In this document: one piece after another, positions 6,767-63,495 of the stretch
Layout of the letters: each line of letters opens with the position of its first letter
Numbering within the stretch: position 1 is the first letter of the stretch
Origin: Botryllus schlosseri
Lineage: Eukaryota
Assembly: GCA_051294905.1 (NCBI GenBank)
Contig: CM119377.1
Span: forward strand, 4,898,001-4,962,000
DNA length: 64,000 bases
Reading direction: 5' to 3'
Notes under the pieces: model-generated
Told to the model about the DNA's origin: nothing
Seen by the model: only the letters and a program-made list of their open reading frames with translations
Database searches by the model: none
Made by a program: the position numbers and the translations under genes

Positions 6767-8951
6767 ATGGATTTTACTGTTACATCATGCATCGGCCTTC
6801 CTGCAGCCGCAGCTTTACTCTGGGGAAGCTACTATTTGATGTAAGTTTACTCCTGTTTTATCTGTAGCGTTGCCTATTCAAGCGATTTCCTGCTTGATCA
6901 TTGGAAAAATGCGATTATTGAACGCACTCGGTTATGTTTGTGTTGTTCCTGTACGTACAAACTGTAGATACTTTATCAATACTGGATTGCTCTGTTATTT
7001 TGCTGTATGAATTCTTTCCTTACATTATCGAATATAGCCTAACGAACGACATTCGATACTCACATGTTATTGTGATGCATTCGCTACGTAGTGGATCACA
7101 TTGTATTTTAACAATTATGACGTTGACTGTTGTTTACATTCAGCAATGCTAGCAATTACGCGACTTAACAGGGCTACGACCCTCACTTATCGAATGTCTT
7201 GCGGGCTTGAATAAATTGCATATGATGTAAAAATAGGGAGAGCTGGCTGACTTGGTCTTGGTGAATCTTTATTATTTGTATGTCCATATTGTCCATGTTT
7301 AGAAAATCTGGCTGCTTTCATATCGTGAACATGGATCGGGCGACCGGATTTCTACGAACTTCAAATCGCTTACAAAGTGTACAAAGGCGACTACATGAAG
7401 AGTGGCAAACCATTTACTCACATCACTAAACTTTTGCCAAATCTTCCTTGCATCAGCGCTTACTACGATGATCCCGAAACGGTGAGGAACCACATTTCCA
7501 CGATAGCCGGCGGAATTACCTTGTATGAAGACACGGCGTAGGCGGACGGTCATAACCGAAGCATCCGATATTTGTTAAAACTATAAATTACAAATAAACT
7601 ATGTTAGTAATTCTGATAGTGGTACGAATAATGTAAGGTTCTATCGCTGTTTCCGGGGATGAACGTATGTGCTCTGGGTCAATTGGACTTCATTATAAGT
7701 ATACAATTCAATAGCATACTCATATTGAAATATACCCGAATATTTCCGGTCCGGCTGACACTCGTCAGTGTTAATCGTTCGCAACTATTAAAGGATTGAA
7801 AATAACATTGTATATCAACAATCGTACATTGAGAGTCTCCTGTTCGCCTGGATTGTACGAATTCCTGTGGCTATTTTGTGATACCAGTTACCACTGATGC
7901 GATTGCTGTTATTCAATTTTTTTTTCTAAAACATGAGTATCATGTATTCTCTCCAGTAGGCATTGCATTGTTCAATGTTCATATCGAACCCTCCACAGGT
8001 CCCGGCGGAAGACTGTCGGTATATTTGTGGCGTCGTCCTTTCCGAGGGCCTTGAAGACTTTTCCGAACTGGACACCATACATCGCGCTCGTGATTACGGC
8101 TTCAGGTGAGACGGACTTCTTACTGAATCATTAAAAATTTATATACCGTAGGTCTGCAAAGTTTATTAGAAATAGCGGCTGTTATTCATTGTATATCCCA
8201 ACCCGACAATGCCTTCTCGTTCTCCCAAACAGCTCGATTGGGTGGTGATATGTAGAAGGTCTCCGTCTTTTCGATCCAAAACGCGTTCGGGCCTCAATCT
8301 TGTACACTTATGTATCTTATATTCCCGTTGCAGGATTCATGACTTTCCCCGCGCTGAACGAGTGATGAAGACTTGCTTTCCGTTTACGACCTCTATCTCT
8401 CCAACAATTGGCGCCATGAAAGTGTACCCAAAACTCGCCAAGTACTCAAAGGTAACTCAGTATCAGTATCAGTTTATTTATATTTTTCATCAGAGCAATG
8501 CACCACAAGATTGCGATACAATGAAAGATGGGAAGGCGTCGTATTAACTTAACGTTTTGCTTTAGTGCAGAGGCGGGCAGAGTAGTCAGCGTTGCTACTC
8601 AAGTAGAAGTAGGAGTAACGACGAAAATTGCTTATCAATTACAAGTATAGAAGCAGAAATTTACAAGACATGAAAGTCGAAAATGAAAGTGAATATTACC
8701 CACGTACGAACTGATAGACGAGCATCGCTTGCCTGTAGCTTAACACGTCTTTCGCATTGGCTAGTCAGTCAAATTCATGAATTGCTTTGTAGAACTTGGT
8801 GCGGAGTCTATCCACTGTGTATTTTTTTTTTCTTTAGGAAAAGAAAATCAATGCGAATCCATATCTAGAGATATGCAAAGACGACACCATTCATTACATG
8901 TGCATACTGGGCGAAAATAAGGATTTCATTGTTGAAGAATGCAGGGATTGA
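6767..8951 (+). CDS. TEX264: TEX264-like protein (N-terminal TM + GyrI-like domain), 5 exons, apparent +1 frameshift in exon 2
   Basis: Exons 6767-6840, 7303-7481, 7999-8105, 8334-8451, 8838-8951, all GT-AG. Translation MDFTVTSCIGLPAAAALLWGSYYLIKSGCF / IAYKVYKGDY..ISAYYDDPET / VPAEDCRYICGVVLSEG..YGFR / IHDFPRAERVMKTCFPFTT..VYPKL / EKKINANPYLEICKDDTIHYMCILGENKDFIVEE matches the recalled TEX264 motif order. Exon 1 + exon 2 = 253 nt, one base out of frame. Confidence 0.85.
7700..7830 (-). mobile_element. Penelope-like terminal repeat copy with degenerate hammerhead
   Basis: Core at 7734-7768 reads CTGACGA gtgtcagcc-ggacc-GGAA atat TC gggt on the minus strand (insertion plus broken GAAA). Confidence 0.65.
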
Positions 8952-19700: not shown

Positions 19701-22700
19701 AATATGATTAAATTGAGCTCATTCTCTTCAAATGTACTCCTGCTCTTTGATCACTAATCCCCACCGGCCACCAGATATTGAATTTTCACATGCGATGTTA
19801 ATCAAATGTATCTGGATCCTATTATTCCCTAGCCTAACATCATGGTACCACCAACAACTTATCGTAACGAACCATTTTTATCTTCCAGCCCTTTATTCTA
19901 ATTGTGCCATAGTGTGAATCAACACTGATATCTCAGATTCAGACGTTGCCTTTAATCTATACGTAGATATGTCATTTTGTTCATCATATGTATTGAATAA
20001 TACTATGCAATGTAGCTAATTTATGCCTTTTCCTGATATACATGCAATCTCACTGACTCAGCACATAGTTCACATGGTTATATTGAACATAAAAAGTTGG
20101 AGCCTCAATAGGCCTACTCTGTGCTGCGTACCTATTTATTGTATTGAGCAGCATATGCTGACTTTAGGAATTTATTACGAACTCTCTTTGCAACTATGTG
20201 TTCGATAATTATTCACATACTTCTTGCAAGACTACAGGTATGAAACCACTGATTCTTTCCATAGTCTGCAACAGTCTAATAAGAGCTAAACAATTATCGA
20301 TATGCTGCTGTCATTTAACTAAGATATCTTGGTTTGTTTATTGGAATGTTTACTGACGCAACAATGCCGCCTACTTCGTAGAATTAATACTTCAAATTGT
20401 TAAATCTTTGCGATAGTGCTTGTGCGCACTGTCATATTTGTTCGATAAATGTTTGATTTTTTTTGTATGTATAAAAGTAATCAAGCTGCTATAGGCTAAG
20501 TGGCATCTTCACCCTACTCGGGCTAACAGCATTTGCAGTTCTTCTTTGTTAAATGTCAGCACTAAAGGATAGACTCCAATATTGAATATCGTTTGCAAGT
20601 GACAGCCTCGTGTATTGTATATGGTGTGGCAAATTGGATGCTTTTCATAGCTTTTAATCAGTAGAAAGGCATTATTTGATATGAAAGTATGATTATCAGT
20701 AGTATTGCGTTGAGAGGTCTTGTCTGGTCGAGCCCGCAATCCAAATAATTAGTTGAACTACGGTCATAGGGAGCCTACCATATGTTATAATCCATATGCA
20801 TTATGCAACCATATATTTATTCCAACTGGCAAACAGCATGTCAGGTGAAACTGTAAAGTAGAATTAGGAAAATATCAAAACACTAGATTGGTCAATTGAA
20901 TATCGACACTTTACGGACAATCATATCTCTGGTTCGGAATTAACCATGCTTGATGTGAATAATTGTGATAAGACGAAACACTATATTTGTAGAATAATGA
21001 GATCAAATAGGACTTTACATCATGACAAAGAATTAAACATTCAGTACCAGTACACTAGGCCTGTCAGTGTCAGCACTGAGGTCACAGGTAATGAATGAAA
21101 TGAAATAGTCATAGTGTATGTGTAACAAGGAAAATTGAACTTTTAAAGTTTTTCGCTTCTTACATCACAGCAATTGAAAAAATGTTTTGCACAATCGGAA
21201 AAGATCCAGAAAAGCCCGAATACCGCTGCTATCCGTACAAGAAAAGTCCATTTCGACACTTTTTGATGATACTTGTTTATGTGAGTCATTCGAGCTCTAC
21301 TTATACGCCCCTTGAGATATCATAGGCTATGGACTTTTTTTAGATCTTTTCTGCCGGATTCATGTGGCTGATGTTCTACTGGCGTCCGGACTGGAAACTT
21401 AAATTCACCCATTATTTAGCATCGTTCAGTAACTGCACCAGTGTATTCCTGGAAAATTTAGACGGAACCCGCCGTGTAAGTGTTCGAACTTTATATTTCT
21501 TCAAAAAACTAGTATCAATTTCTCTGTGATTTAGCGAGTATAGTACTGTATTACTGCAGGTAATACTCGGGTAATATACACTACGGCAGGTGTTAGCTCT
21601 CGGTAATTATAGATTCTCAGCTGCTGAACAGTGTACCTAGCTCAGTCACAAATTAATGCAATTGCTCATCACAGCGATTGTTATCAGTCAGAAACGTCTG
21701 TACGGTACTGGTTTTTGTGATCTTTTCTGACATGGCCGCGATCAAGCACATTGCATGGTGCACTTCACGGTATGTTTTCTACCATTCAGGTTCGGATGCT
21801 AAATCGGGGGATGTTTTGAAAGTACTCCAAAGTGTTTTCCATAAGTTTGGGGAGTTGTGACTTTATATATATATTTTTGTACCGCTCAGTTTTCAGTTTA
21901 ATTCAGCCCAGATTCAGAGTCAAACTTCCTAATTAGGATTTGGGAGGGCTGGCTTCGCAGTCCAAATTTCTCAACTGCAGGGATTTGGGGTTGTAGTAAA
22001 ATTTCATGACCATCACTCGAAGTAAATATTTACTTACAGGGAGTCAGAGTCGTAATTTCATTTCAGAAAAAAGTGAGACCCGTGGTCATAAAATCAATTT
22101 TGAATAGTATATTCATATTGAAATAAACCCGAATATTTTCGGCTGACACTCGCCAGGGGTAATCGTCAGCAACTAGTAGAGAATTGGAGGGAACATTGTA
22201 TATCAACTATCGTATCACAAAATATGACGTCACCAGCATGAAATTCGGAATAAGAGAGCGTTCAAGGTACTATTCTTAGATGGTACACGAACTCCTTTTG
22301 TTGACACAACCTTGGCTGGTGTATTTTGTTACAATTCGACTACAAGGCACACAAATAAAAGCGTGAACGGCCCCTTCCGACGACACGAAATCTGTCGTCT
22401 CGATAATTTTTCCGCACAAGCGGAATTATCCAACATATGCTTCCTGTTGTACGCACTAGCCGATTGACTAATGACCACCCTGAGTTTTCTTGAAATCCTG
22501 GGCACAAACGCAGATCCAAGGAGCTTTCTTTAATAACACAGAACATCCAAATAGTAGTAAGTAGTATGGTGCGATGTGTTGTCATTGAAAATTGTGTTCG
22601 TCTCTCTATCCCTGGTGTCCCTCATAGTGTTCCTGTGATAAAAGATTACGGTTTGTTCTACTCTTTGACAGGTCTATGTTTCTGAAATCAAAGTAACGGA

Positions 22701-25700
22701 GGCATCTGTGAAAAAATGGGCGCCATACCTATTCTCGAAGTCGCCGACTATGTGGGGAATGTATAATGAACAGTGAGTGTGTGACTCTGCTCGCATTGTT
22801 TTAAATCTACCTACTGGTGTTCGTTGTTGTTGCCAGGCAAGATATAACCTTTCGCAATGATAAGTTTGTTGATGAAGAGAGTGGCAGCACGGAGTTTGAT
22901 AATGGGGAACTGGTCAAGTACTTTGTTCACCATTTGTCGAAGTACATTTGGGACGAGGCGTTGCAGGTACGTAAACTGGATTTTGTGTTTAACCGTACTC
23001 TGATTAGGGATGGGAACATCGATTGAATTACTCAAATCTAATGTCGGCGGGCTGGATATTGGGAAATGAAGTACCTGACGGGCGGGATTCCTGAATCGAT
23101 ACATTAAACGCGTATTTATCCACCTATACAAGGATTAATCGTAGTTAATGGAAATTTCAAGTTTGAAGCATAGAGACCAAAACAGTGTTCAATGAATTTA
23201 CTGATGTGATGTATTTCAAGAGCTGTTGATGTCAATGAGACATCTGTGTTCTTTCAAAGTTGTGAACAGGTTCTTTTAACTCTGGCTGCATGTCGCGCGC
23301 AAAGAAAACAAGGAACTATAAAATAAGTAAAAATTACTATTATTTGTGTCTGTAAAAAAAGAATGAATAAACTACAATCACTATGATAATTTGCATAAAA
23401 TATTCATATTTATTCCCGAAGCTTTTCGGCTGACACTCGTCAGGGGAATATCGTCAGCAATAATGCGAGAATTCGAATAACTATGTTCAGCAACAATATA
23501 TATCGCTAATTATGACGTCACACAGAAAATATACAAAGTTTTCCACCGCTGGATAACAGCGATGGATTGCTGAAGTTATCTGATAATTTGACGTGGTGAG
23601 CAAGTAGTGGAGAATTGCAGCAGACTGTGGCCGCGCGTCGTTTGTTGCGCGCCCCTGGTATAATGTATTTTATGTAGTATATACGAACGAGGGGTTGATT
23701 TTTTTTCCAAATTCACCAAGATATCAATTCATTAGGGTGGAGAATTGCGGCAGACTGTAGCCGCGGGCCACATTATCATGTACGACCGTAAACTCTCTGC
23801 GGGTCGCTCAAAATCACGTCGCGGGCCGTATGTCGCCCGTCCCTGTCTTACGGTGATGTTAGAAACCGTGTCATTTTCTGTGTGGTCGCGTTAAAGGTAC
23901 ATATTTCCATATTATCCATACTCCTATGATGTCAATATCACTGATACCTGTACTCAATTTCGATCAGCCCTAATTTTGATGCCGCATTATTTCCAGAACT
24001 TTGTCAAAGTGGAAGGTTACGACGGTAACATGACTCTTGACGACGTCCATAAGTCGGCGGACAGTCCGATTTCGAAGGCTGACGCGGAAGCGATGTGCGA
24101 TCTGTTTGGTGAGAACGTTATTCATGTCAAGGTATGATTGATGACAATACAATTTGCGTCCTTATTTACTGGGTATGATTTATTGGCGATAATATTACTT
24201 CACGAAAATGATGCTTGCAGAATGCTAAAGTTTTATCAAGTCGAAGTAGGCCACACTTGCTTTAGTACCCAATTTGATTAAAGAAATAGACAGGGAAAGC
24301 AGCCTCGATATGTTTGTGCTTGTCGTGAACTCATTCTGAATTCAAACGAGGTAGATTGTTTAGTAAACTCTGTTGTTGATTGTATTGATTGTATGTTATT
24401 CGACACTGATTACCTCTGCAAGAAATCGTCTGCACAAAAATGTCAAACCTCGTGACTATCTGTTAGGATGATGCAATATTACGGCCCGTGAATCAGGATA
24501 GATAAGTCACGCGATCTGCTGTTATGAAACAATATTCATTGTTTCTATCGAGATGCATTCAGAGCTATGTCACTTTCGCTTGCTGTCATGTCGAATTTGT
24601 CCTTTATGGTTGTTCCCTGATTTACAGATTCCGTCCTACTTCAGCTTGCTGGTCGCCGAAGTGCTGAATCCTTTTTACGTTTTTCAATTGGCCGCCTGCT
24701 TGTTTTGGATGGCTGATGAATATTATGCCTATGCCACTGCGATTCTTGTCATATCGTTCATATCTGCTGTTGTCTCGCTCATAACCGTAAGTTGTTAATC
24801 TACGTTCCGGCATATTGATTGCAGTTTAGTTGCGGTAGATGTGTTGATTTTCGTTTTTCTTGTTACACGAAATTGCGATGATTTATGTGGCAATAGTGTA
24901 GCAATTATGCTTGGCATTGCGACTTGGTGAGGTGTAATGTACATGGTACAATCATCTCAAATTATTTGCAGATTCGCAAGGAAAGAGTAGCTCTCCATGA
25001 CATGGTGGAAAGACACAACACCGCCCGCATCTCTGTTGTAAGAGATATAAAAGCCCGACAAGATTTCAATGCACCCTCTAGCAGCAATGGAGGTGAGAAG
25101 GAATTATTGATGGGGATTGACTTTGGAATGGTTATAGAAACTTGATAAACTCGACTGTACTGCTTTTGGCCCAATTTGCGTTGAATTATTTGCCCAATTT
25201 CAAAACAGTAAAAAGTTGATGTTTTATTATTTGAGGTGCGGTAGCTGATTAAGATAATTGAATATTTACAAATCCTGATTCAACATTTATGGATTTCAAG
25301 AGACCGGTATTTTATTTCGTTAATCTCAAGCAATCTGTCCATTCAATTCAAACAATTTGATGAATGAGAGAGTAGGTCAAATGCATTGTTAAAGCAATTC
25401 CCAGAAAAGCTGAACTAAGGTTTCAGTCCAAACTTTTGTCTTGTCGATGATTTATATCTATCTGGGAATATTTCAAATGGCGTCGTCCAATTTTACACCC
25501 GCCATTGTCCATCTAGTTCCGACAGCCAAAGATTATGTGATGGAGGATATTTGGATCAAAGATCTGGTGCCCGGCGATGTCGTCGTCATTCCTTCGTCCG
25601 GCGTGCAGCTGTCTTTCGATGCGGCTTTGATTTCGGGTAAACTATTGTGGTTACCTTTTCGCCAACAATACAGACATTACAACATTTATTCATTTAAGGA

Positions 25701-30075: not shown

Positions 30076-33000
30076 GACAAATTCACTCGTAAAATGATGC
30101 AAAGTTATCTGAACTACTCACTAGTAAGTAATTTTGCCTTGAGGGGCTGTTCAAGTAGAAGTGGAATTGGTGTAAAAACGCAACCACTGAAATAAGTACT
30201 GCAAGCAGGCAAAACATACTCGAGTACTCTGACAAAGTATAAATACTCCATTACTGACCGCCTCTGATTCTGGGTGTGTGGCATATCTACAGTTTCTTTG
30301 TACGTGTATCAACACAGCCAATTGTATTAGCGCAAGCTTGCTAGACAATTGTCCACCTTGAAATTTACATGATTGCTCTGTATGTCGCATAAGACACCAA
30401 TTGAGCAAATTGATGACCCATTAGATGTACAGTTGTAAATCAGCAATCACTTAATTAGGCAAAGCTTCTCAAAGATTGTATTTAAGTTGTAGGTAAGGGC
30501 TTCAAGCTGTCTTCTCTTGTTCACAATACTTCTCGAGTGATTTTCGTGATGGCATTTTTGTTGTAGCGAGAAATTGGACGGTCTTTAATTGAGTATGCCT
30601 TCCTGAGCATAATCGTTACTCCAATAATGCTTTGCGAACATTAATCAGGAAATGCAACAACGCATCCTTTAAAACGCTATTATAATCAATTAACCAATTG
30701 TGTTGGCGTATGAACGAATTTCTGATTACATCCGCTAATTTCATTCACAAAAATGATGTTACTCTGTCCAAACGCTACTTTTCTTGAAACTGCTCGAGTG
30801 GAAGTGTGCATCGTGGGGATTTTTGTTTCATGGCTAAGCAAAAATTTGGGATTCCTTCGAATGCTTGCAGATGAACGTAAGGGTTTCCCAAGTCGTTAAA
30901 GGTTGATAACCACTGACGTAGATTGACAGCTCACAGCATACTGTTATCATTCGTGTTATTTGATAGTCACTGTTATCCTTCTCGAATTCAGGTCGACGTT
31001 GTCGCCTTCGACAAGACCGGCACCCTTACGGAAGAAGGTCTGGACCTGTCCCACGTCCTCCCAGTGTCTTCGGCCAAATTCGACTCGCCCTTGAAACCGG
31101 ACCGGCTGAAAATGCAGGATAAAAAATCAGACCTCCTTCGATGCATGGCGACCTGCCACTCGTTGACGGTGATCGACGGGGAAACGTCCGGGGATCCTTT
31201 GGACCTGAAAATGTTCGAGGCTACTGGATTCGAACTCGTTGAGCCAAAGGTTTGGACGCTTATTTTGTGCGTTATGTCCACAGGCTTCCCACATAGAAAA
31301 CATTACGACTTCTGTGTGTAAATCGCGAAGTACCCCTGTACTTTTCTGTGATCGAAAATAATAACCTAACGGTATCATTTCCAGACTCTCTTACATCGAG
31401 GCTGGGGATTCCGGCATAACAATTGATCAAACATTTTAATCTCTCCGCCCCAAACCTTGAATCTAATGAAATATGGGTGTAATGCTTTCGAAAACTGCAT
31501 CCGTTGTAGTACAATTTATTGGAGATAAGCTGAGGTTCAAGATAAAGCCAATTTGGCTAGTATGAATGTAGAAATACATACTGCCAGGCCAAGGCAATCC
31601 CTGGTAGCAATTCAGGTTGTACCAGAGTGCTGCCATGGGTGTACTTGATATTAGTATTCTTGTCACTACGCTGGTGCCTTGTGATAGGAGACTCGTGGGA
31701 ATTGTTGCTAGTTCAACAAGTATCATGCAATGAATATAGTTCCGAAGGCATCGTTATAAGGTTCGCATCACCAAACATTGCTTACAGTAAAGCCTCGGTA
31801 ACATGCCGGTGCAACTGTGCATTCTGTCACATAAGCTGCTCAATACTAGGCCATTAAGCCACATTGGACAGGAGCATTTTTTTAAATTTCAGTATAGAAT
31901 TTGAATTTTTTCTTTCGGCACACACCTCCATGCAGACCTCGACGACTAACCCATGATAAGAAGACAAAGATTTTGCATTCATGCTTTCCGGTTTTCGTAG
32001 GTGGATGAAACCACCAATTACGATCAACTGCAAACGACTTACGTACGACCTGCTGCTTCCTATGACGAGACAAATCCCGGTTTGGAGGTGAGCCTATTAT
32101 CTTTTCTTGCACCTTTATTAATGTACAATTTTATTGTAACACTTGTAGTGTTGGCCTATCTTTATGACATTTGTACTCAAACGGGGCATAATGCCCTGTA
32201 ATGCATAAAGTGCAATTTGTATCTGGAACATGGCAACGTGCCAAATCATGTCACCAGGCTGAAGTTGTCAAGAGGATGTAGAAATAATGTCCGTAAATTT
32301 GTACTCAAATACATATAGAATTCACAATTTCCAAGACTATTGAATAGTATATTCATATCGAAATAAACCCCAATATTTTCGGCTGGCACTCGTCAGGGGT
32401 CATCGTCAGCCTGACGAGTGTCAGCCCAAAATATTCGGGTTCATTTCAATATGAATATACTATTCAATTGTATATTGAGGTTCTGTGCCTCCAAGAAGCT
32501 CTTCAAATTTCCAAGATATGTGAAAACTGCATCAAGCTGAAGTAAAAGTTGAAGTGTCTGAAAATTATGCAAGAAAGCAGTGTCACAAAGTAGATTTGGT
32601 CGCATACTTTTAGCAGTCCGTCGTAGTTTGGTACTTTCGAGATTGCAAGATGCATGTTTGCTGCTAGCGCGACATGACTGATGGTGCTTCCAAGAGGTGG
32701 AATCTTCGAAAATATATTCAGTTACTGTGACACCAGAGCTATTTCGCGGGGTTCTTATGACGATTTCATTCGTAGAAGTGATGATAACTTATCTCAAAAC
32801 GACTTACTACCTTTAAAAGTTCAAATTGAAAATAAAATAACTGGTTTTGCCTGATATATTCTTTGTTATTGACCAACTCTTACTTCAGGACGCCGCGAAT
32901 TCCGGGACCGATTACGAAGTCGGTATAATCCGACAATTTCCTTTTCTGTCGTCATTGCAACGCGCGAGCGTTATCGCGAAACCGCTCCAGTCCGGTCACA

Positions 33001-36000
33001 GCGATATGAGCGTTTACGTGAAAGGGGCGCCGGAAACCATCGCCAGGCTTTGTCTGCCGGATACCGTCCCGTGCGATTTTAAGGATGTTTTGAAGGTGAG
33101 AGGGCGGCCGCGGGTAATGGGTAGCCTTTAATTGTGAAAATTCAGGCAGAAATTTTTGTTATGGCGATTGCGGTGCCTGGTATAATGCCAGTGGCATTCA
33201 AAGAAGCTTATTTCACAGTAAGTTAAAAAGAAAGAGTCCTAGATACAGTTTTTGCCCAAAACTGAAAACTGTTCAAGTAGAAGTAATGGTGGAGCGCCCG
33301 TCTTCTTGATCGGTGGGTCGTGGGTTCGATCCCCGGCCGGGTCGGACCAAAGACCTGATTAGTAACGCTGGTATCAATGACTTCCCCGCTTGGCGCTCAG
33401 CATTACCGGGATAACATGGAGAGGTGGTGCAACACTCAGAAAGCCTTGCAAGGCTATGTCTGCACCTTCCTTGTCCAGCGGCATATGCAAATCATGCTCT
33501 CATGGTATGCATATGCACCGATCGTGTGTATGTATGTTGGGATCAAGTCACTACCTTCGAGTCACGAGTCATTTCGAGTCATTGCACATTTTGACTCGAG
33601 TCAAGTCAAGTCAATCGATTTTCGAAGGTGACTCGAGTCAAGTCAAGTCACTCGAAATTTGGAGGTGACTCGAGTCAAGTCAAGTCACAATTCAAGTCAA
33701 GTTGCCTTTTCAAAGTATGAGGCATGATTACATCATTGCATTTGCTAGCTGTCTGAATACAGATTGAGTGGTCATTGATTCTTGACTTGAAATTAACTCG
33801 TAGATTTTGCTCCGAGTCACGAGTCAATCCACATTTCTGACACGCCGAGTCAAGTCAAGTAATACGAAAAAGGTGACTCGAGTCATCCCAACACTGGTAT
33901 GTATATCGCGAGTCAGTGTATATGCCGCAAAATATATCAAGGACAAAAATAAACAGCGTCCTATTCCTATTCAGTTAACCTGATCCGTAGGCTATTTCGA
34001 CCTGTCTGTATTGTAATCGCATTCATAAAAGTAATGCAAAGTGTAGTTTTTTGTAAAGTAAAAGTGGAAGTTGTCAGAAAACGTAGCCACCTGAGTAAGT
34101 AGCGCAAGTAGTACTACATATAATCCAAAAAAGTCGAATTCTAAACATGGCATGTTCCCGCCTCTTCCAGGCTCACACGAAAGAAGGCTACAGGGTGATC
34201 GCCCTGTCGTTCAAGAACGTCGAACTGAAATGGTTGAAAGCGCAGAAGATCGAACGCGACCTAGTCGAGAAAGACCTCGCCTTTCTCGGATTTCTGATAC
34301 TCCAAAACAAATTGAAGCCGACATCTGCGGGTGGGTGCCGGTGCGATGTCAATTTCGACGGGTCAACAGTCGGATTCTGTCCAAACCCCGTAATGCGGGG
34401 AACCGTGTCTTTCTTACTGGCCGGATTGGAGTCCGAACCGTTTTCGTAGCTATGCATTTCGTTAATGATCTATTGATATCTTAACGATTTGGATGTAGGC
34501 AAGGCAGAGGCCGTCAGCAATAAATTATAAAAGTGGTCAGTAACAAAAATGATAAAATAGCTAGTTTTGCATATATATCTGCACCTGCCAATTGCACGCC
34601 ATACACTCATCGTGCACGTACGTACAGGTCGTGTGTATTGGGGGTGTTCAAAAATGACTTTTTTTCTCAAATTGTAATGGCTACTTGATAAAATTGTTAA
34701 ATTACCTAATTTAGGCCTACAGAGCAAATTCGGTTCAATTCCAGCCAGTAGCCGCATTGCTAAGGAGAAGAAAGTTTCTATTTATTATCTAAAAATAAAT
34801 CAAAAAAAATTTGAAAATTTTTTGTTCATCCCATGAAAGTGTTGGGTTGTCTACAGAAACGGTGCTCACCAAATTTGGTTCAATTCCAACCAGTGGAAGC
34901 GGAGTTATTGCCGTCGAAAAATTTGGATTATCAATAAAATAGTATTTACGGTGACCAACTCTTTAATTATTATTTATTATAAGTGTGCCCACCGTAAATA
35001 CTATTTTATTCAAATCCAAATTTTTTGACGGCAATAAGTCCGCTTCCACTGGCTGGAATTGAACCAAACTTGGTGTGTAGGCTAATGTTAGGTTACCGCA
35101 CTATTTTATCAAGTAGCCAGTATAATTTGAGAGAAAAAGTCATTTTTGAACACCCATAGTGTGTATGTATATCTATATCTTTGAGTCGGTGTATATGCCA
35201 CAAAAACATGTAATGTCGACCAAATCTACTGCATGAAGCTTCTTACTCGAATACTTACAGTTCTTCATTTTTTACTTCTACTTGTTATTGAGTGTAATTC
35301 TACTGGAGTAGCAACACCTTGACCACCTCTGAGGCACGGACACATTTCTCACTCATCTGGCTTGTCAATGTTAAAGGCTGAGATCGCTTTGCATGATTTT
35401 TATCGCAAAGATCGGAAAGTGAAAGTGATTGGGTCATTTTTATGCGCACTCGTTTAGGGGCGATACTATAATTGATTGCGCCAGATCGTAGCACTGAGGT
35501 CGAATTATATATTCAGGGGTCATCCGAGAACTGGACAACGCGACGATACGCACAGTGATGGTCACCGGCGACAATCTGGAGACCGCGATATGCGTGGGTC
35601 GCGAATGCAGAATCTTGAAGCCCGGGAAAGTGCTGCTAGGCGTGACCTCTGACCTTTCGGGGACGTACCCGGTGTTGCGCTGGCGCCGGGTCGAGGAGGA
35701 GAGGAGCCCGAAAAAGTGAGATTTTCCGCCGTGCTAATAGCCTTCCAAGCATTAACAAGAGCTGGCGGTATGGTGCTGTAAATTAGGTAGCTCACTATGT
35801 CGTGTTGGAGATGAAGAATTTTTGTACTTGATGCAAAAAAGTCAAGTCTGTGCCAACAGGAGTTTTGTGTAGCATCTAAAACTAATACATTGAGCGTAAG
35901 CGATCTATTTGCCCCGATTATTCGAAATTTAGTGTCGGTGACGTCATATATTTGCTGATACGGTTGTTGATATACAATGTTCCTTCCTATTTCTCTACTA

Positions 36001-39000
36001 GTTGCTGACCGTCACTCCTGACGAGTGTCAGCCGAAAACGTTCAGATTTATTTCAATATGTATATATTATTCGATTGTATATTAAATTTCTGTACCGCCA
36101 AGAAGATCTTAAAGTCAAGATGTTGTATTCTAGTGATTCTGAACCTTTTTTAGTGGACCGGCGAGCCTCCAAATATCAAAAATAACCCCAATTTATGAAA
36201 GCAAAAATTGGAAACTAAATATAATGAGAAAGTTTGCGTTGGATTTTTGATATTGCGTTATACGTGGATTCTGCAAGGCATAGTCCCGTTAAAACAACTA
36301 ACTTTATTGTGGTTGTTCGGATTCTGGATTTGGATTACAGATAGTAAATCCGCTCACCCGGCTCAATTTCCCCCGGATCGCGAATCCTATTTTGTGTTTG
36401 CAGAAAGTCGCTGTCGTCCTCTGACGAACTATCTGAAACGGTCATCGCCATGGGTGACGCGCTGGCGCCCGGCGATTGCCAAATTGCGGTTAGCGGCACC
36501 GAGTTCGCGGTTGTCAGAGAGTATTTTCCGCAATTCGTCAAAGCCATGGCGGTGCAGGGTGAGTGGATGTATGTCACTTTTTAGGAGTTGATTTTCAGAG
36601 GTGCTCTGTAGCATTGTTCAAAAATAACTTTTTTCTTCCATATTCTGGGGATTCACTGATTAAATTGTTAGGATGCCTGAAAAAAAAAAACGCTGCACAC
36701 CGAATTTGGCTGAATTCGAAGCAGTAGAAGCCTCAACATAGCCAATTAAATTAAGTTGTTGCAGTTCCAAGTTTTGAATTTGCAAAAATAGCATTGACAG
36801 TACTGGGTAATCCCAGAATTTTTAATGAAAATCTCAAATAACTTCGCTTCTACAGGTTGGAATTTGTCAAATTCGTTTTGCATCGTTTTTGTAGACCTCA
36901 ACAGTTCCATAGGTTTGACAGTGGAGTTTGGGGATTCACTGCCAAAATTATTTTTTTCAAACTCCACTGTCAAACCTATGAAACTGAGGTCTACAAAAAC
37001 GATGACAAATCGAATCTCTCAGTTACTCGATTTTGCCCAGCCCTACTTATGATTATACAGATCAAAATCAATAACAATTATGACATGATAATAGTATGAA
37101 TCAAAATCAATAACAAATATGACATGAAGACCCAGTGTGTATCCAGTAACTAGCCGCATGGTCAATAATAATGTTACTTGCATATATTTCGGGTCGTGTC
37201 GGCATACCGCTGGACTCATTTGGCAAGGACAGGATTATTCGGCGCTTTGACTTGTAAAATCTTAGATTTCGGCTAATATGCGAAATATTGTTCTTTTTGG
37301 TCATATATGACGACCTACGAAAAATGTGTCTGGCCCCTGTCCAGTGTGCATGCCAATGCGTGGGAACTGATATCTTGGTCAGAAAAATCCCAAGTTTCGC
37401 GATCAAGCTAATAAAATTTTGGTTATTTTGTTTTGGTGATTTTTATTTTGATAATATAACTAATTGCAATATTACCGCGCGGGCCACTCAAATCCTTCTT
37501 GCGGGCCACGGTTTGGCCGCCCCTGTTCCAGTTGAAGTAGTTTTTAACACATCTTGGAAATAGTCACATCTATATTGAGTCTTCTCGCCTTCTACTTCTA
37601 CTTGCCCGCTGCTTCTACTCAGAATTAGTACAAATTTAAGGCTATACTTCTATTAGAGTGCCAATGCTGACTAACTCGACCGCCCCGGTTGCTTTCGCAG
37701 GTGCTATTTTCGCGCGCATGTCTCCCGGTCAGAAGACGCAGCTGATGGAAGAGTTGGAAGGGGTCGGCTATCATACGCTGATGTGCGGTGACGGCGCCAA
37801 CGACTGCGGTGCGCTTAAACGCGCCCACGTTGGACTTTCTCTATCGGAACTGGAGGTTGGTTGTGTGGGCTGAGCTGTTTGGAATGTGAGAGAGAGCGGC
37901 TGCCTTTTTTGTGATTTTCCTTAGTAGGACGAATTCAGTGAATTTTATTGTCGTTGCGTTGCCGTAAAAGGAAATTCACAGAAATTGTATTGTAAATAAG
38001 GTCCGCATGGCCCAGTGGTAGCCTGGAAATTTCAGTCGTGACAGTGATGAGAAGCTGTTACCTAAGTGCTTATCACTTACCACTCCTATGCTCCACATAA
38101 ATCAATCCCAACGGGACTGAAGTACTTATGGCAATTGAAGGAGTCATATTATAATTGAATAGGCCAACCAATATTTCTACAGAGACAGATGTTGGTAGGA
38201 CTCTCGTTCATTATTCTAAACAAATGTCGTTTGCTCTGTTCAATTTACGCTTGAACATGATAACCCAACAATTAATGGATGTTGTGTTGTGTTTGTGTAG
38301 TCAAATGCCCGCTTTTTAGGTTTTATTCGTAATAATTGGCAATGTTTTTATTTTAACGCACTGCGTTAATACTCCACTGACTTGTTTCTACTTCTTCGGA
38401 GTAGATGCTTTTAAGCAAGAATAGTGATTTTCTAATATATTTTCATCACATTATTGTATCTTCTCCAATTTTTTGCTACCCTTACGCAGGCATTGAAGTT
38501 ATTCAGATTACAATCTTCTTCCCAGGCATCTGTCGCAGCGCCGTTCACCGCAAACATCGAAAACGGCATCGGTTCCGTCGTCACTCTGATGCGCGAGGGC
38601 CGCGCCGCGTTGGTCACGTCTTTCGGAATGTTCAAATTCATGGCGCTCTACTCCATGATCCAGTTCACCACTATTCTGCTGCTCTACCGCAACAACACCA
38701 TCTTGTCGGACTACCAGTTCCTCTATATCGACCTGATCGTTATCGATTTCATCGCCATTACTATGTCAAGAAATCACTCTTACAAGTATGTGCTTATTCC
38801 CTTTGACACTGACATTATTATAAGGGATGGGCAAAATTATATACATGCATGACTCGTTTCCGGCTGTGGTATAAGGCGTTGAGTATTCGAGCAACAGTCC
38901 TTGCATTCACCAAGAGAATATTGCCAGTTTAAAATCACACTAACGATGATAATTTGATATTGTCATCCCAATGTCTACCCATTTCATTGCACTTTGTGAC

Positions 39001-42635: not shown

Positions 42636-44056
42636 AGAGGTGGTCAGTAACGAAGTACTTCTACTTTTTGGAAGTACTCAAGTAGTTTTCCTCTACTTTG
42701 GGTACTTACTTAAGTAGATCTGATTTTCTCTGCTTCTACTTCGTAATATTTTGTGATCGACTTAATTGCTTCTCGCTATTTTCAGTTTGTCAAGTAGAAG
42801 TAGTTTAATCCCCAATACGTAAGATAGCCTGAGGAATTTCGGCGCTGTTTTCACGGAGTAACAACATTTAATATTCTAAAAAGTCAAGTAATGCCCAGAA
42901 ATTTTGGTGCACTTCGCGCACAGTAGTTATGGAGTCACATGTGTTTGTCAAAATTGTTGATGTAAGGTGTTCTTTCCAATTCTCTACTATAGTTGCTGAC
43001 GATTAGGCTATAGCCTACCCTTGACGAGTGTCAGCCGAAAATATTCGGGTTCATTTCAATATGAAGATATACTATTCAATTGTATACGAAAGTATCAGCG
43101 AATATGATTTAGGTACCGGATTGCTTAGGACCGCATTGTCGTCCATATCAAATATTTCATCACAGTAAATATGGCCAACCATAACGCTTGAAACTACCGT
43201 TTCGCAATCTAGCATTTGCCTATCATAGGTATATCGTAAACTAGCAGCCCATGACGTGTCCTGCTAATCTGGAAAATCCGGCTTTTTCGGAACGTTACAC
43301 CTGTTTTAGCAGATCACCTTTGAAGCTTTATGGACAAAAGACATAAAATATATTTTCCGCTTTTTAGAAGTGGTATTTGCATTTCACTTTCAATTCCGAG
43401 TATTATACATTGAGTTCTAAGTACATTCAGTTCTTTTGTCTGCAGAACATTCATGTTGCAGCGAAAAAGAAAGTGTAGTTTTGCCTCTATTTTCCGAAAA
43501 TAAAGCAACACTAAATATAAATTTAACGATCCACAATATTTGTTATCAAAGTAGGCCTATACTAATTGCGCAAAGTATTTAAACCGTATCCGATACAACT
43601 TCTCTGTATTGCTCTTCGCCTAAACTTGGCCTTGTGGCCTTATATTACGGGGTAGGGCGCCATGCTATGAAGTTCTCTAAAACGGGGTCTTCAAGTAAAC
43701 CGAGGGTTAGTATCGCATTTTCATATCAATACAATTATTTGCATCCCATGATGCGAAAGAATGCATATTCTGTCGAAAATTAATACCTCCTGGATTGCAT
43801 CAATATGAACCAAGCTCTCTATACCTTACGCATAGCTCAATTTGCAGCTTTTGGCAGTCCATGCCAACGAATTGAGACTGTTTTCAAAACTACTAACTTA
43901 CTTGAGTAGATTTAAAGTCAGGCAATTCCACTTTTACTTCAAGTAGTTTATGTTGCTTATGGAAAAAGTACTTCTACTCGTACTTGAGTAGATTTTTTTT
44001 CGTCGCTACTTCTACTTCTACTTGAGTAGCTCTCTTGACTACTTTGACCACCTCTG
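42636..44056. mobile_element. CAGAGG-family MITE (composite) enclosing a Penelope-like repeat
   Basis: AGAGGTGGTCAGTAAC start, TTTGACCACCTCTG end, AAGTAG/CTACTT subterminal repeats; TSD not convincing. Hammerhead copy at 43017-43050 (C3 to U). Confidence 0.55.
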
Positions 44057-63319: not shown

Positions 63320-63495
63320 CAGTGAATTGAATAATATATTCATATTGACATATACCCGAATGTTGTTGATTTCGATTCTCTACTAGTTGCTGGCGATTAC
63401 CCCTAACGACTGCCTGTCTGAAATATTCGGGTTTATTTCAATATGATATATTATTCAATTGTGTACTGGCATTCTGTAGCTCCATGAGTCTCTTC
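63320..63495 (+). mobile_element. Penelope-like terminal repeat with inverted partial copy and degenerate hammerhead
   Basis: GAATAATATATTCATATTG...CAATATGATATATTATTC inverted flanks around ACCC-CTAACGA..GAAATATTC-GGGT. Confidence 0.65.

What the first reader, a model, noticed from the sequence alone, without database searches (positions are those of the whole stretch)
23411..23450. Dispersed family of minimal hammerhead ribozymes with covarying stems; one fully intact copy
A repeat at 9 loci (cores at 7734-, 22127-, 23411-, 32367-/32411+, 36018+, 43017+, 57330+, 61345+, ~63399+) fits a type I hammerhead: stem I - CUGACGA - G(UGUCAGC)C - GAAA - stem III - UC - stem I. Seen in sequence: stem III is always a 6-nt palindrome but varies as AAUAUU (most copies), AACGUU (36036-36042 region) and AAGCUU (this copy). 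Stem I also covaries, from ACCC/GGGU to a 7-bp UAUUCCC/GGGAAUA here. Established: minimal type I hammerheads with a vestigial stem II and palindromic stem III occur in Penelope-like terminal repeats and are thought to cleave as dimers. Inference: this lineage carries a structurally selected, possibly undescribed ribozyme family, with predicted cleavage after the C at 23418 on the minus strand.
Basis: partly seen in the sequence, partly recalled or inferred. Interest (0 to 1): 0.82.

Follow-up and report, generated by a model that had tools for sequence, protein, structure and literature searches.

The report
Penelope retrotransposon hammerheads with pseudoknot helix
The repeats are dead tail fragments of Penelope-like jumping genes of a sea squirt, each carrying the small self-cutting hammerhead RNA motif already known from such elements, here in a form whose second helix is built by pairing with a box just upstream instead of by a hairpin.

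Summary
The motif CUGACGA-G-UGUCAGC-C-GAAA occurs 9 times in the window (0 in shuffles). A looser pattern occurs 8,197 times in the 495-Mb genome, against 5 for a reversed control.

It is not a new ribozyme class. It is the hammerhead in the tail of Penelope-like retrotransposons (PLEs). The motif starts about 108 nt after an ORF with reverse transcriptase and a GIY-YIG-like end. Copies show variable 5' truncation, head-to-head inverted pairs and 2.7-kb tandem arrays.

The copy at 23411-23450(-) is intact. It lies in a ~150-nt dead tail fragment of one PLE family (205 exact copies). Its 7-bp stem I comes from a 1-nt insertion.

Covariation between PLE lineages supports stem I, the palindromic helix III, the C3-G8 core pair (U3-A8 in some lineages) and a 6-bp pseudoknot. 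That pseudoknot pairs a box upstream of stem I with "loop II" and appears to stand in for the missing stem II hairpin.

RNA-seq showed no read ends at the predicted cut site.

This is a known kind of element (Cervera and de la Pena 2014; Lunse 2017). I found no description of the pseudoknot-for-helix-II form, but could not read Lunse 2017. The scan had already noted this family elsewhere in this genome (s1-231978 and others).

The parts
23389..23540 (-). Focal element: a ~150-nt 5'-truncated tail fragment of a Penelope-like element of family C
   Evidence: blastn of the focal copy against L023/L033/L034 aligns from -97 to +54 around the core at 90-94% identity. The family has 205 exact motif copies and tandem arrays of period 2722.
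23453..23458 (-). Upstream box GCUGAC, the 5' strand of the pseudoknot (surrogate helix II 10.2-10.7)
   Evidence: Exact complement of 23429-23434. The same box/loop complementarity holds with different sequences in all lineages.
23444..23450 (-). Stem I 5' strand UAUUCCC
   Evidence: Pairs with 23411-23417. It is 4 bp (UCCC/GGGA) in the rest of the family; the extension to 7 bp is due to a 1-nt insertion.
23437..23443 (-). Catalytic core C3-A9 (CUGACGA)
   Evidence: Rfam Hammerhead_1 alignment.
23428..23436 (-). G10.1, unpaired U, pseudoknot 3' strand GUCAGC, C11.1
   Evidence: G10.1-C11.1 is invariant and the 6-nt strand covaries with the box.
23418..23427 (-). G12 A13 A14, then A15.1-AGCU-U16.1 (palindrome AAGCUU), then C17. 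The predicted cut is between 23418 and 23417.
   Evidence: The inner palindrome pairs covary between lineages: AUAU, AGCU, UCGA.
23411..23417 (-). Stem I 3' strand GGGAAUA
23405..23407 (-). Remnant of the element's ORF start codon (AUG AAU AUU ...), 10 nt after the cut site
   Evidence: In family A the in-frame AUG ([10 protein letters not shown]...) lies 14 nt after the cut site and opens the 860-codon frame.
7707..7826 (-). Decayed family A tail copy, with an insertion in GAAA and a mutated box
22099..22253 (-). Family A tail copy with core A6 to G
32340..32410 (-). Family A tail copy, the left arm of a head-to-head pair. It has G at position 17 and a loop U to C change.
32410..32506 (+). 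Family A tail copy truncated just 5' of the core, the right arm of the head-to-head pair. G12 is changed to C.
35918..36072 (+). Family A tail copy with intact core and box, broken stem I, and AACGUU
42953..43086 (+). Family A tail copy with C3 to U and a 12-nt insertion between box and stem I
57172..57438 (+). Longest family A tail copy in the window (~267 nt). The motif is intact except C11.1 to U. An inverted partner fragment lies at 57109-57154(-).
61252..61443 (+). Decayed family A tail copy with core GUUACGA
63375..63487 (+). Heavily decayed family A tail copy. An inverted partner fragment lies at 63327-63364(-).

Best explanation
The repeats are 3'-terminal fragments of Penelope-like retrotransposons (PLEs) of an ascidian. 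Each carries the element's hammerhead ribozyme.

The motif is a type I hammerhead with these parts:
- an open stem I of 4-5 bp
- the full catalytic core
- a single G10.1-C11.1 pair instead of a stem II hairpin
- helix III reduced to A15.1-U16.1 around a 4-nt palindrome

Shown by comparative analysis: the six nucleotides between G10.1 (plus one unpaired base) and C11.1 pair with a box 2-4 nt upstream of stem I. This gives a 6-bp pseudoknot.

Inferred: the pseudoknot stacks on G10.1-C11.1 and acts as a 7-bp helix II, with its 5' strand moved upstream of stem I.

Inferred from the palindrome and from published work on PLE hammerheads: two copies, from tandem units or from two transcripts, pair through the palindrome to build a real helix III and cut after H17.

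In intact elements the cut lies 6-14 nt upstream of the ORF's AUG. Cleavage would therefore release a unit-length RNA that starts just before the coding region. It may also serve translation or recognition by the element's protein (inferred).

The window copies, including the intact-looking one at 23411-23450(-), are dead, 5'-truncated insertions. They have no role of their own.
For: Abundance:
- 9 window matches against 0 in shuffles.
- 8,197 genome matches to CUGANGAG-N7-CGAAA-N4-UH against 5 for the reversed control.

Link to PLEs:
- The family A motif starts ~108 nt after the stop of an ORF with RVT_1 (E 2e-8 and 7e-9).
- The ORF has a C-terminal GIY-YIG-like motif, VVYEYRCHCDCGYVGRT (PF01541 E 0.023, below threshold; PF01541 is on record in homologues).
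- At least 150 loci are 98-100% identical in the C-terminal 200 aa. Open frames reach 860 aa. Tandem arrays have period 2692.
- Families B and C form arrays of period 2778 and 2722.
- Copies show variable 5' truncation, two classes of 3' end about 40 nt apart, and head-to-head inverted pairs. These are the published hallmarks of PLE insertions (PMC8557442).

Structure:
- Every lineage has the exact complement of its own loop strand 7-10 nt before the core, and not the complement of other lineages' loops, apart from one chance 5-mer match.
- Box/loop pairs in this genome: GCUGAC/GUCAGC, ACUGAC/GUCAGU, ACUAAC/GUUAGU, ACUGGC/GCCAGU, CGUGCC/GGCACG, UGUGCC/GGCACA.
- In related PLEs of other assemblies: UCUGAC/GUCAGA, UCCGAC/GUCGGA, GCAGC/GCUGC, AGAUGG/CCAUCU.
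- Formal count on 7 lineages: 98.2% of cells paired, against 70.8% shuffled and 25-40% slid. 14 of 16 pairs change on both sides: pseudoknot 6/6, stem I 5/5, C3-G8 to U3-A8, and the inner palindrome pairs.
- U3-A8 is a known active natural core covariation (PMC3088659).

Precedents from the literature:
- PLE hammerheads in pLTRs, palindromic 15.2-16.2 and dimer activity (PMC4209133).
- Pseudoknots joining stems I and II in about 40% of hammerheads (PMC3088659).
- A ~3-nt linker joining stem I and stem II strands in validated permuted hammerheads (PMC10085705).
- The AUG lies 14 nt after the cut site in family A.
Against: - No cleavage has been shown. In bulk and single-cell RNA-seq reads laid on a tandem junction, depth over the tail was 170-580 but no place where molecules begin or end was reported at the cut site. 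96% of the bulk RNA-seq reads and 62% of the single-cell reads run on into unrelated flanks, on both strands, so most of this RNA is read-through of dead copies.
- Rfam Hammerhead_1 scores the focal copy 22.8 bits against a gathering score of 34. It does not report families A, B or C at E<=1.
- In families A, C and E the loop strand can also pair with the core's own CUGAC. Energy minimisation prefers that inactive hairpin.
- Whether the pseudoknot stacks as helix II was not tested; no 3D modelling was done.
- PLE hammerhead cleavage was not needed for insertion in vitro in Anolis, and no read ends were found at the cut site there either (PMC11167929).
- The sequences in the formal count were chosen by me after I had seen that they fit.
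Confidence: 0.8

Rival explanations
1. The conserved fold is kept mainly as a recognition or translation module. On this reading it serves binding by the PLE reverse transcriptase for target-primed reverse transcription, or ribozyme-assisted translation start. Self-cleavage would be weak or dispensable.
For: - In the Anolis PLE the hammerhead cleaved only with the element's protein present, catalytic mutants did not affect insertion, and no reads ended at the site (PMC11167929).
- No read ends were seen at the cut site here.
- The motif sits 6-14 nt before the AUG, as in RNA viruses where ribozymes aid translation (PMC13725137).
Against: All catalytic-core bases are kept in every lineage. The C3-G8 active-site pair covaries to U3-A8. 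This points to selection on the catalytic geometry and not only on a binding shape.
Confidence: 0.2
2. The box/loop pairing is an off-switch or alternative conformer that competes with the active fold. On this reading it is not a structural helix II.
For: - Box and core share CUGAC in families A, C and E, so the loop can pair with either.
- An earlier scan note raised this reading (s1-236824).
Against: - Without the pairing the ribozyme has only a 1-bp helix II.
- The pairing is Watson-Crick in all lineages, whereas loop/core pairing degrades in families B and D.
- The box-to-stem I linker is a constant 2-4 nt. This matches the ~3-nt stem I to stem II linker of validated permuted hammerheads.
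Confidence: 0.1
3. The short copies are an independent non-autonomous element, retrozyme- or SINE-like, that spreads through small circular RNAs and merely resembles PLE tails.
For: - Thousands of 60-270-nt copies.
- Some same-strand pairs lie 135-250 nt apart.
- Animal retrozymes are thought to derive from PLE pLTRs (bioRxiv 10.64898/2026.07.22.740005).
Against: - Copy 5' ends are scattered from -1 to beyond -1500 and run without a break into the PLE ORF.
- No short tandem arrays were seen.
- Head-to-head pairs are always in the order minus then plus, as for PLE insertions.
Confidence: 0.05
4. Chance resemblance of a repeat to the hammerhead consensus, with no ribozyme.
For: Sub-threshold Rfam score.
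Against: - 8,197 matches against 5 for the control.
- The same architecture is kept with different sequences in many PLE lineages and assemblies.
Confidence: 0.01

Closest known systems
Minimal hammerheads of Penelope-like elements (Cervera and de la Pena 2014, PMC4209133; Lunse, Weinberg and Breaker 2017, not readable here)
   Same: - Type I order.
- Sits in the PLE terminal repeat or tail.
- Helix I of 4-5 bp.
- G10.1-C11.1 kept.
- Helix III reduced to A15.1-U16.1 plus a palindrome, which implies dimers.
- Thousands of copies per genome, many sequence families with compensatory changes, tandem and inverted arrangements.
   Different: - The published metazoan PLE motifs have a 6-8-bp hairpin helix II and are described as lacking tertiary contacts.
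- Here there is no hairpin. A 5-6-bp pairing with a box 5' of stem I takes its place.
- The extra base between A9 and G10.1 is absent in this genome and present in L072.
Pseudoknot-stabilised hammerheads (Perreault et al. 2011, PMC3088659)
   Same: Watson-Crick pairing between a stem II loop and sequence beyond stem I holds stems I and II side by side. U3-A8 core covariation also occurs.
   Different: In those, the pseudoknot is an addition to a normal stem II of several base pairs. Here stem II proper is one base pair, and the pseudoknot uses 6 of the 7 nucleotides between G10.1 and C11.1.
Non-circularly permuted hammerheads, types SGC and CSG (PMC10085705)
   Same: The helices of the core are formed by strands that cross (pseudoknots). 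One strand of stem I is joined to one strand of stem II by about 3 nt.
   Different: Here the block order is unchanged (CUGANGA, GAAA, cleavage site, as in type I). Only the 5' strand of helix II is displaced.
Poseidon PLE of Anolis carolinensis, PAc (Frangieh et al. 2024, PMC11167929)
   Same: The hammerhead lies next to the ORF start in the pLTR. Insertions carry a 'tail'. No RNA-seq ends are seen at the cut site.
   Different: In PAc the ORF starts at stem II and the cut site is 26 nt inside it. Here the AUG lies 6-14 nt after the cut site. PAc is described with a stem II and loop II.
Animal non-LTR retrozymes (PMC7229834; bioRxiv 10.64898/2026.07.22.740005)
   Same: Type I hammerheads with a weak palindromic helix III that act as dimers, related to PLE pLTRs.
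   Different: Retrozymes are short tandem repeats of 170-400 nt that give circular RNAs, and they have canonical helices I and II with loop-loop contacts. Here the copies are dispersed 5'-truncated tails of autonomous PLEs.

Membership tests
Hammerhead ribozyme, type I | Conserved core C3 U4 G5 A6 N7 G8 A9 ... G12 A13 A14, A15.1-U16.1, H17 | tested here: met
   All present in the focal copy and in every family. U3-A8 replaces C3-G8 in some lineages.
Hammerhead ribozyme, type I | Stem I supported by covariation, open-ended | tested here: met
   ACCC/GGGU, UCCC/GGGA, CGCUA/UAGCG, CACUG/CAGUG, CACUC/GAGUG and others. 5 of 5 pairs change on both sides.
Hammerhead ribozyme, type I | Stem II hairpin closing on G10.1-C11.1 | tested here: not met
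   Only G10.1-C11.1 is present. The intervening 7 nt do not self-pair. A 6-bp pairing with an upstream box is present instead.
Hammerhead ribozyme, type I | Score at or above Rfam RF00163 gathering threshold | tested here: not met
   22.8 bits against 34 for the focal copy. Nothing at the gathering threshold in the window. Families A, B and C are not reported at E<=1.
Hammerhead ribozyme, type I | Site-specific self-cleavage after H17 | tested here: inconclusive
   No pile-up of read ends at the site in RNA-seq. Ordinary RNA-seq is a poor assay for 5'-OH ends, and most reads came from dead monomeric copies. A biochemical assay is not possible with these tools.
PLE-associated minimal hammerhead | Located in the terminal repeat or 3' tail of an element encoding RT plus GIY-YIG endonuclease | tested here: met
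   Homologues carry RVT_1 and GIY-YIG. Hammerheads flank the ORF on both sides in L077.
PLE-associated minimal hammerhead | Helix III reduced to a short palindrome (dimer architecture) | tested here: met
   AAUAUU, AAGCUU and AUCGAU; the longer AAAGCUUU in L078. Inner pairs covary.
PLE-associated minimal hammerhead | Large hairpin helix II of 6-8 bp (Cervera and de la Pena 2014) | tested here: not met
   No hairpin is present. With the pseudoknot the total is 7 bp, which matches the published length but with a displaced 5' strand.
Penelope-like element, endonuclease-positive | Tandem or pLTR arrangement, adjacent inverted 5'-truncated copy, 30-40-bp tail | tested here: met
   Tandem periods of 2692, 2778 and 2722. 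Head-to-head pairs. 3' ends at +56-63 or about +100. Compared with PMC8557442.
Penelope-like element, endonuclease-positive | GIY-YIG domain at Pfam threshold | tested here: inconclusive
   PF01541 at E 0.023, 15.4 bits against a cut-off of 22.6 in this genome's element. The motif is visible by eye. The domain is on record, partly as faint hits, in homologues.
Animal retrozyme | Short tandem repeats (170-400 nt) that give circular RNA | tested here: not met
   Copies are dispersed, 5'-truncated and continuous with the PLE ORF. No back-joined reads typical of circles were reported, apart from one odd joint with inserted letters.

The most novel reading that the evidence does not exclude
A clade of Penelope-like elements, in this ascidian and in several other animal assemblies, uses a hammerhead whose helix II is not a hairpin. 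It is assembled from a strand placed 5' of stem I, which is a strand-level permutation of the type I fold. Current descriptors and Rfam miss it, and it has not been described. Its cut site lies 6-14 nt before the ORF's AUG, so it would make the 5' end of the translatable element RNA.
Probability: 0.4. Interest if true: 0.65.

Novelty: new variant of a known kind. Interest (0 to 1): 0.5.

Why it matters
- **Missed copies.** More than 8,000 hammerhead copies in one chordate genome escape the standard Rfam model and the published PLE descriptors, because neither stem II nor stem III is a hairpin.
- **A more plastic fold.** If the box/loop helix really replaces helix II, the hammerhead fold is more flexible than the three circular permutations and the recently reported block permutations suggest. 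Searches for PLE ribozymes would then need a pseudoknot-aware descriptor.
- **A test system.** The element is very young and abundant here, with at least 150 near-identical copies and intact 860-codon frames. It is therefore a practical system for testing what the PLE hammerhead does: RNA processing, translation start, or protein recognition. That question is still open.
- **For the window itself.** The result is ordinary. The copies are dead transposon tails.

Tried and rejected
- **Rfam.** Nothing in the window at gathering threshold. With relaxed E-values on loci of families A, B and C there was no hammerhead hit. The only hits were spurious miRNA-like matches to a head-to-head palindrome junction.
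- **RNA evidence.** Reads laid on a tandem junction gave no read ends at the cut site and no clear circular joints, so they give no support for cleavage in vivo. This is not evidence against it.
- **Energy folding.** Monomers and dimers fold into alternative hairpins (core CUGAC with loop GUCAG; CCGAA with UUCGG). Pseudoknots cannot be scored this way. Only the focal copy's dimer shows the intermolecular AAGCUU helix. I did not use this as evidence.
- **AACGUU as a compensatory variant.** Rejected. There are only 9 copies genome-wide, all decayed.
- **The 7-bp stem I as selected covariation.** Rejected. It comes from a 1-nt insertion in a dead copy.
- **Retrozyme or SINE reading.** Rejected.
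- **Families D and E.** They are documented only from printed pattern rows.
- **Alignment limits.** MAFFT misaligned L072, L077 and L078, so the formal count used 7 lineages.
- **Literature limit.** Lunse et al. 2017 is not held. I could not check whether it already shows this pseudoknot.
- **No hammerhead found.** L076 showed none within 330 nt of its ORF end.
Full report

Yes. On the minus strand the focal stretch reads, from 23450 down to 23411: UAUUCCC, CUGACGA, G, U, GUCAGC, C, GAAA, AGCU, U, C, GGGAAUA. This fits a type I hammerhead:
- stem I of 7 bp
- a complete core
- G10.1-C11.1
- A15.1-U16.1 around AGCU
- C17 at 23418

The 20-mer CTGACGAGTGTCAGCCGAAA has 9 matches in the window at up to 3 mismatches. 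None appeared in 100 dinucleotide-preserving shuffles. A tenth, badly decayed copy lies at 63375-63458.

Rfam finds nothing at gathering threshold. On the 261-nt neighbourhood it aligns Hammerhead_1 end to end at 22.8 bits, against a gathering score of 34 (E 0.0023).

Only the focal copy is intact in every element. 57334(+) differs by C11.1 to U. The others carry disabling changes.

**2. What the repeat is**

The genome is a 495.5-Mb ascidian-type assembly. The pattern CTGANGAG-N7-CGAAA-N4-TH occurs 8,197 times, against 5 for the reversed control.

Copies share a common 3' end and have scattered 5' ends, from -1 to beyond -1500 relative to the core. The longer copies run without a break into an ORF with these features:
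- an RVT_1 domain
- a C-terminal VVYEYRCHCDCGYVGRT...ESTFIK motif of GIY-YIG type (Pfam GIY-YIG below threshold at E 0.023)

The motif starts about 108 nt after the stop codon.

The element is young and abundant:
- At least 150 loci are 98-100% identical over the C-terminal 200 residues.
- There are 8,678 first-look candidates.
- Open frames reach 860 codons.
- Tandem arrays have period 2692.

Other features match PLE insertions as described by Craig et al. (PMC8557442):
- Head-to-head inverted pairs, always in the order minus then plus, are frequent. They explain the window pairs at 32340-32506, 57109-57438 and 63327-63487.
- The 3' ends fall at +56-63 or about +100, which matches the 30-40-bp PLE 'tail'.

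Homologues from other assemblies (2,815 at E<=1e-5) carry DUF8422, RVT_1, HTH_animal and sometimes GIY-YIG. They show the same inverted arrangement.

These are therefore Penelope-like elements, and the motif is their known terminal hammerhead (PMC4209133).

**3. The focal copy**

It is a ~150-nt tail fragment, 23389-23540(-). It is 90-94% identical to members of a second PLE family, here called C. Family C has 205 exact motif copies and tandem arrays of period 2722.

The rest of family C has GAUAUCCC before the core and a 4-bp stem I (UCCC/GGGA). The focal copy has one extra U, which by chance extends stem I to 7 bp. That extension is also why only this copy reaches a visible Rfam score.

**4. 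Structure and covariation**

The genome holds several PLE lineages with different hammerhead sequences:

| Family | Box | Loop strand | Stem I | Helix III | Position 17 |
|---|---|---|---|---|---|
| A | GCUGAC | GUCAGC | ACCC/GGGU | AAUAUU | C17 |
| C | as in A | as in A | UCCC/GGGA | AAGCUU | C17 |
| E | ACUGAC | GUCAGU | CGCUA/UAGCG or CGCUC/GAGUG | AAGCUU | U17 or C17 |
| B | ACUAAC | GUUAGU | CGCUA/UAGCG | AAGCUU | U17 |
| D | ACUGGC | GCCAGU | CACUG/CAGUG or CACUC/GAGUG | AAGCUU | C17 |
| U3-A8 families (692 against 57 for the control) | CGUGCC; UGUGCC | GGCACG; GGCACA | not tabulated | not tabulated | not tabulated |

G.U intermediates are also seen: ACUGGC with GUCAGU, GCUGAC with GUCAGU, and ACUGAC with GUCGGU.

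Related PLEs in other assemblies keep the same layout with other sequences:
- UCUGAC/GUCAGA (L071, L072, L073)
- UCCGAC/GUCGGA (L074, L078)
- GCAGC/GCUGC (L077, which has hammerheads on both sides of the ORF)
- AGAUGG/CCAUCU (L075)

A script showed that each lineage has the exact complement of its own loop strand 7-10 nt before the core. The one exception to lineage specificity is a chance 5-mer match.

A formal count on seven lineages gave:
- 98.2% of cells paired, against 70.8% after shuffling and 25-40% after sliding the partners.
- 14 of 16 pairs changed on both sides: all six pseudoknot pairs, all five stem I pairs, the C3-G8 pair (U3-A8 in three lineages) and the two inner palindrome pairs.

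U3-A8 is a known active natural covariation (PMC3088659).

Caveat: I picked these sequences after seeing that they fit, and the lineages are related. The slid control keeps relatedness and is far lower.

Decayed copies show uncompensated changes, as dead copies should. For example, 467 of 8,660 have lost the loop A while keeping the box.

**5. How it most likely works**

Shown:
- the core, stem I, the palindrome and the box/loop pairing are conserved by compensatory change across PLE lineages
- the motif sits between the ORF stop of one unit and the ORF start of the next in tandem arrays
- the in-frame AUG ([10 protein letters not shown]...) lies 14 nt after the cut site in family A, 10 nt in the focal remnant, and 6-8 nt in L071, L072 and L073

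Inferred:
- The 6-bp box/loop helix stacks on G10.1-C11.1 and acts as a 7-bp helix II. This is the length reported for the hairpin helix II of other metazoan PLE hammerheads.
- One unpaired base then crosses the deep groove, as in H-type pseudoknots.
- A 2-4-nt linker joins the distal end of helix II to stem I. A similar ~3-nt linker is found in experimentally validated permuted hammerheads (PMC10085705).

Inferred from the palindrome and from the published behaviour of such motifs: two motifs pair through the palindrome to make helix III, and cleavage occurs in dimers. This would confine cutting to tandem or abundant element transcripts.

The loop can also pair with the core's CUGAC in families A, C and E. 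That pairing is not maintained in B and D, so covariation favours the box.

**6. Expression**

Raw RNA-seq reads of the same species were laid on a tandem junction.
- Depth over the last ~250 nt of the element was 170-580. Over the ORF it was 0-6, rising to about 8-20 only in the 200-300 nt nearest the tail.
- Both strands were covered about equally.
- 96% of the bulk RNA-seq reads, and 62% of the single-cell reads, ran on into unrelated sequence.

Most of this RNA is therefore read-through of dead copies.

No place where many molecules begin or end was reported at the cut site. This gives no support for cleavage in vivo. The assay is weak for 5'-OH ends and for dimer-dependent cutting. The same negative result was reported for the Anolis PLE.

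**7. Comparison with what is known**

Hammerheads in PLE terminal repeats, their palindromic helix III, dimer activity and huge copy numbers are published (PMC4209133; Lunse et al. 2017, cited). Pseudoknots between stems I and II are common in hammerheads generally (PMC3088659).

What I could not find described is a PLE hammerhead in which the stem II hairpin is absent and a pairing with the 5' flank takes its place. Reviews describe PLE motifs as lacking tertiary interactions. Cervera and de la Pena report 6-8-bp hairpin helices II. No paper in the searchable library links hammerheads of this kind with tunicates; one genome paper lists 9 Rfam type I hits in Didemnum.

Lunse et al. 2017 is not held, so prior description cannot be excluded.

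The scan itself had already met this family on other pieces of this genome. One follow-up (s1-231978) reached the same reading.

**8. Verdict**

The window feature is a set of dead PLE tails carrying the known PLE hammerhead. The pseudoknot-for-helix-II architecture is well supported by covariation and is probably an undescribed variant. Interest is moderate.

Noticed in passing
G000 genome-wide, e.g. C1:21257009-21257043(-), C1:29689399-29689433(+): A second set of hammerhead-like motifs has core UUGAUAA/UUGAAAA (U3-A8 instead of C3-G8): 692 matches against 57 for the control. They have their own box/loop pairs (CGUGCC/GGCACG, UGUGCC/GGCACA). One recurrent subfamily (box GGUGCC, loop GAAACC) has an imperfect pairing. 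Another (loop CCAGAC or CCAGAA) has no complementary box within 15 nt.
   Followed up: partly
L046 minus strand 2209-2260 (G000:C2, tandem junction); window 23405-23407(-) as remnant: In tandem units the 860-codon open frame of the next unit begins inside the hammerhead. Its first in-frame AUG lies 14 nt after the predicted cut site. In related elements of other assemblies the AUG lies 6-8 nt after the site.
   Followed up: partly
L016:19-113: The palindromic junction of a head-to-head PLE pair scores as a microRNA precursor in Rfam (mir-607, 47.6 bits, below threshold). Such junctions are likely to give false miRNA or hairpin calls across this genome.
   Followed up: no
G000:C1:1478475-1478509(-), C1:7163080-7163114(+), C1:40180337-40180371(+): Motifs of the form CUGAUGAG-GUGGACU-CGAAA recur with a different upstream sequence and no complementary box within 15 nt. 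They may be a further family, or the box may lie further away.
   Followed up: no
L077:39 and L077:2798 (ENA ERZ27264304): A more distant PLE relative (46% protein identity) has the pseudoknot (GCAGC/GCUGC) but a conventional small hairpin helix III (A-C GAUU G-U) and A17. The pseudoknot and the loss of helix III are therefore separable traits.
   Followed up: partly
L073:3389(+) and L073:3611(-) (ENA ERZ25067590): These are two decayed copies of another family, with loop UCUGCC or UCUGUC and A17. The box GACAGA is present in only one copy, and it pairs perfectly with the loop of the other copy. This suggests an ancestral GACAGA/UCUGUC pseudoknot.
   Followed up: no
window 25988-26036(+): A 31-49-nt fragment matches the part of the family C tail downstream of the hammerhead. 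It is inverted relative to the focal copy and lies 2.4 kb away. It could be a remnant of an inverted partner or an unrelated fragment.
   Followed up: no
G000:C1:19470250(+) and 19470360(+): A family B motif and a family D motif lie 110 nt apart on the same strand. Tails of different PLE families insert next to each other, which could allow mixed dimers because both have the AAGCUU palindrome.
   Followed up: no
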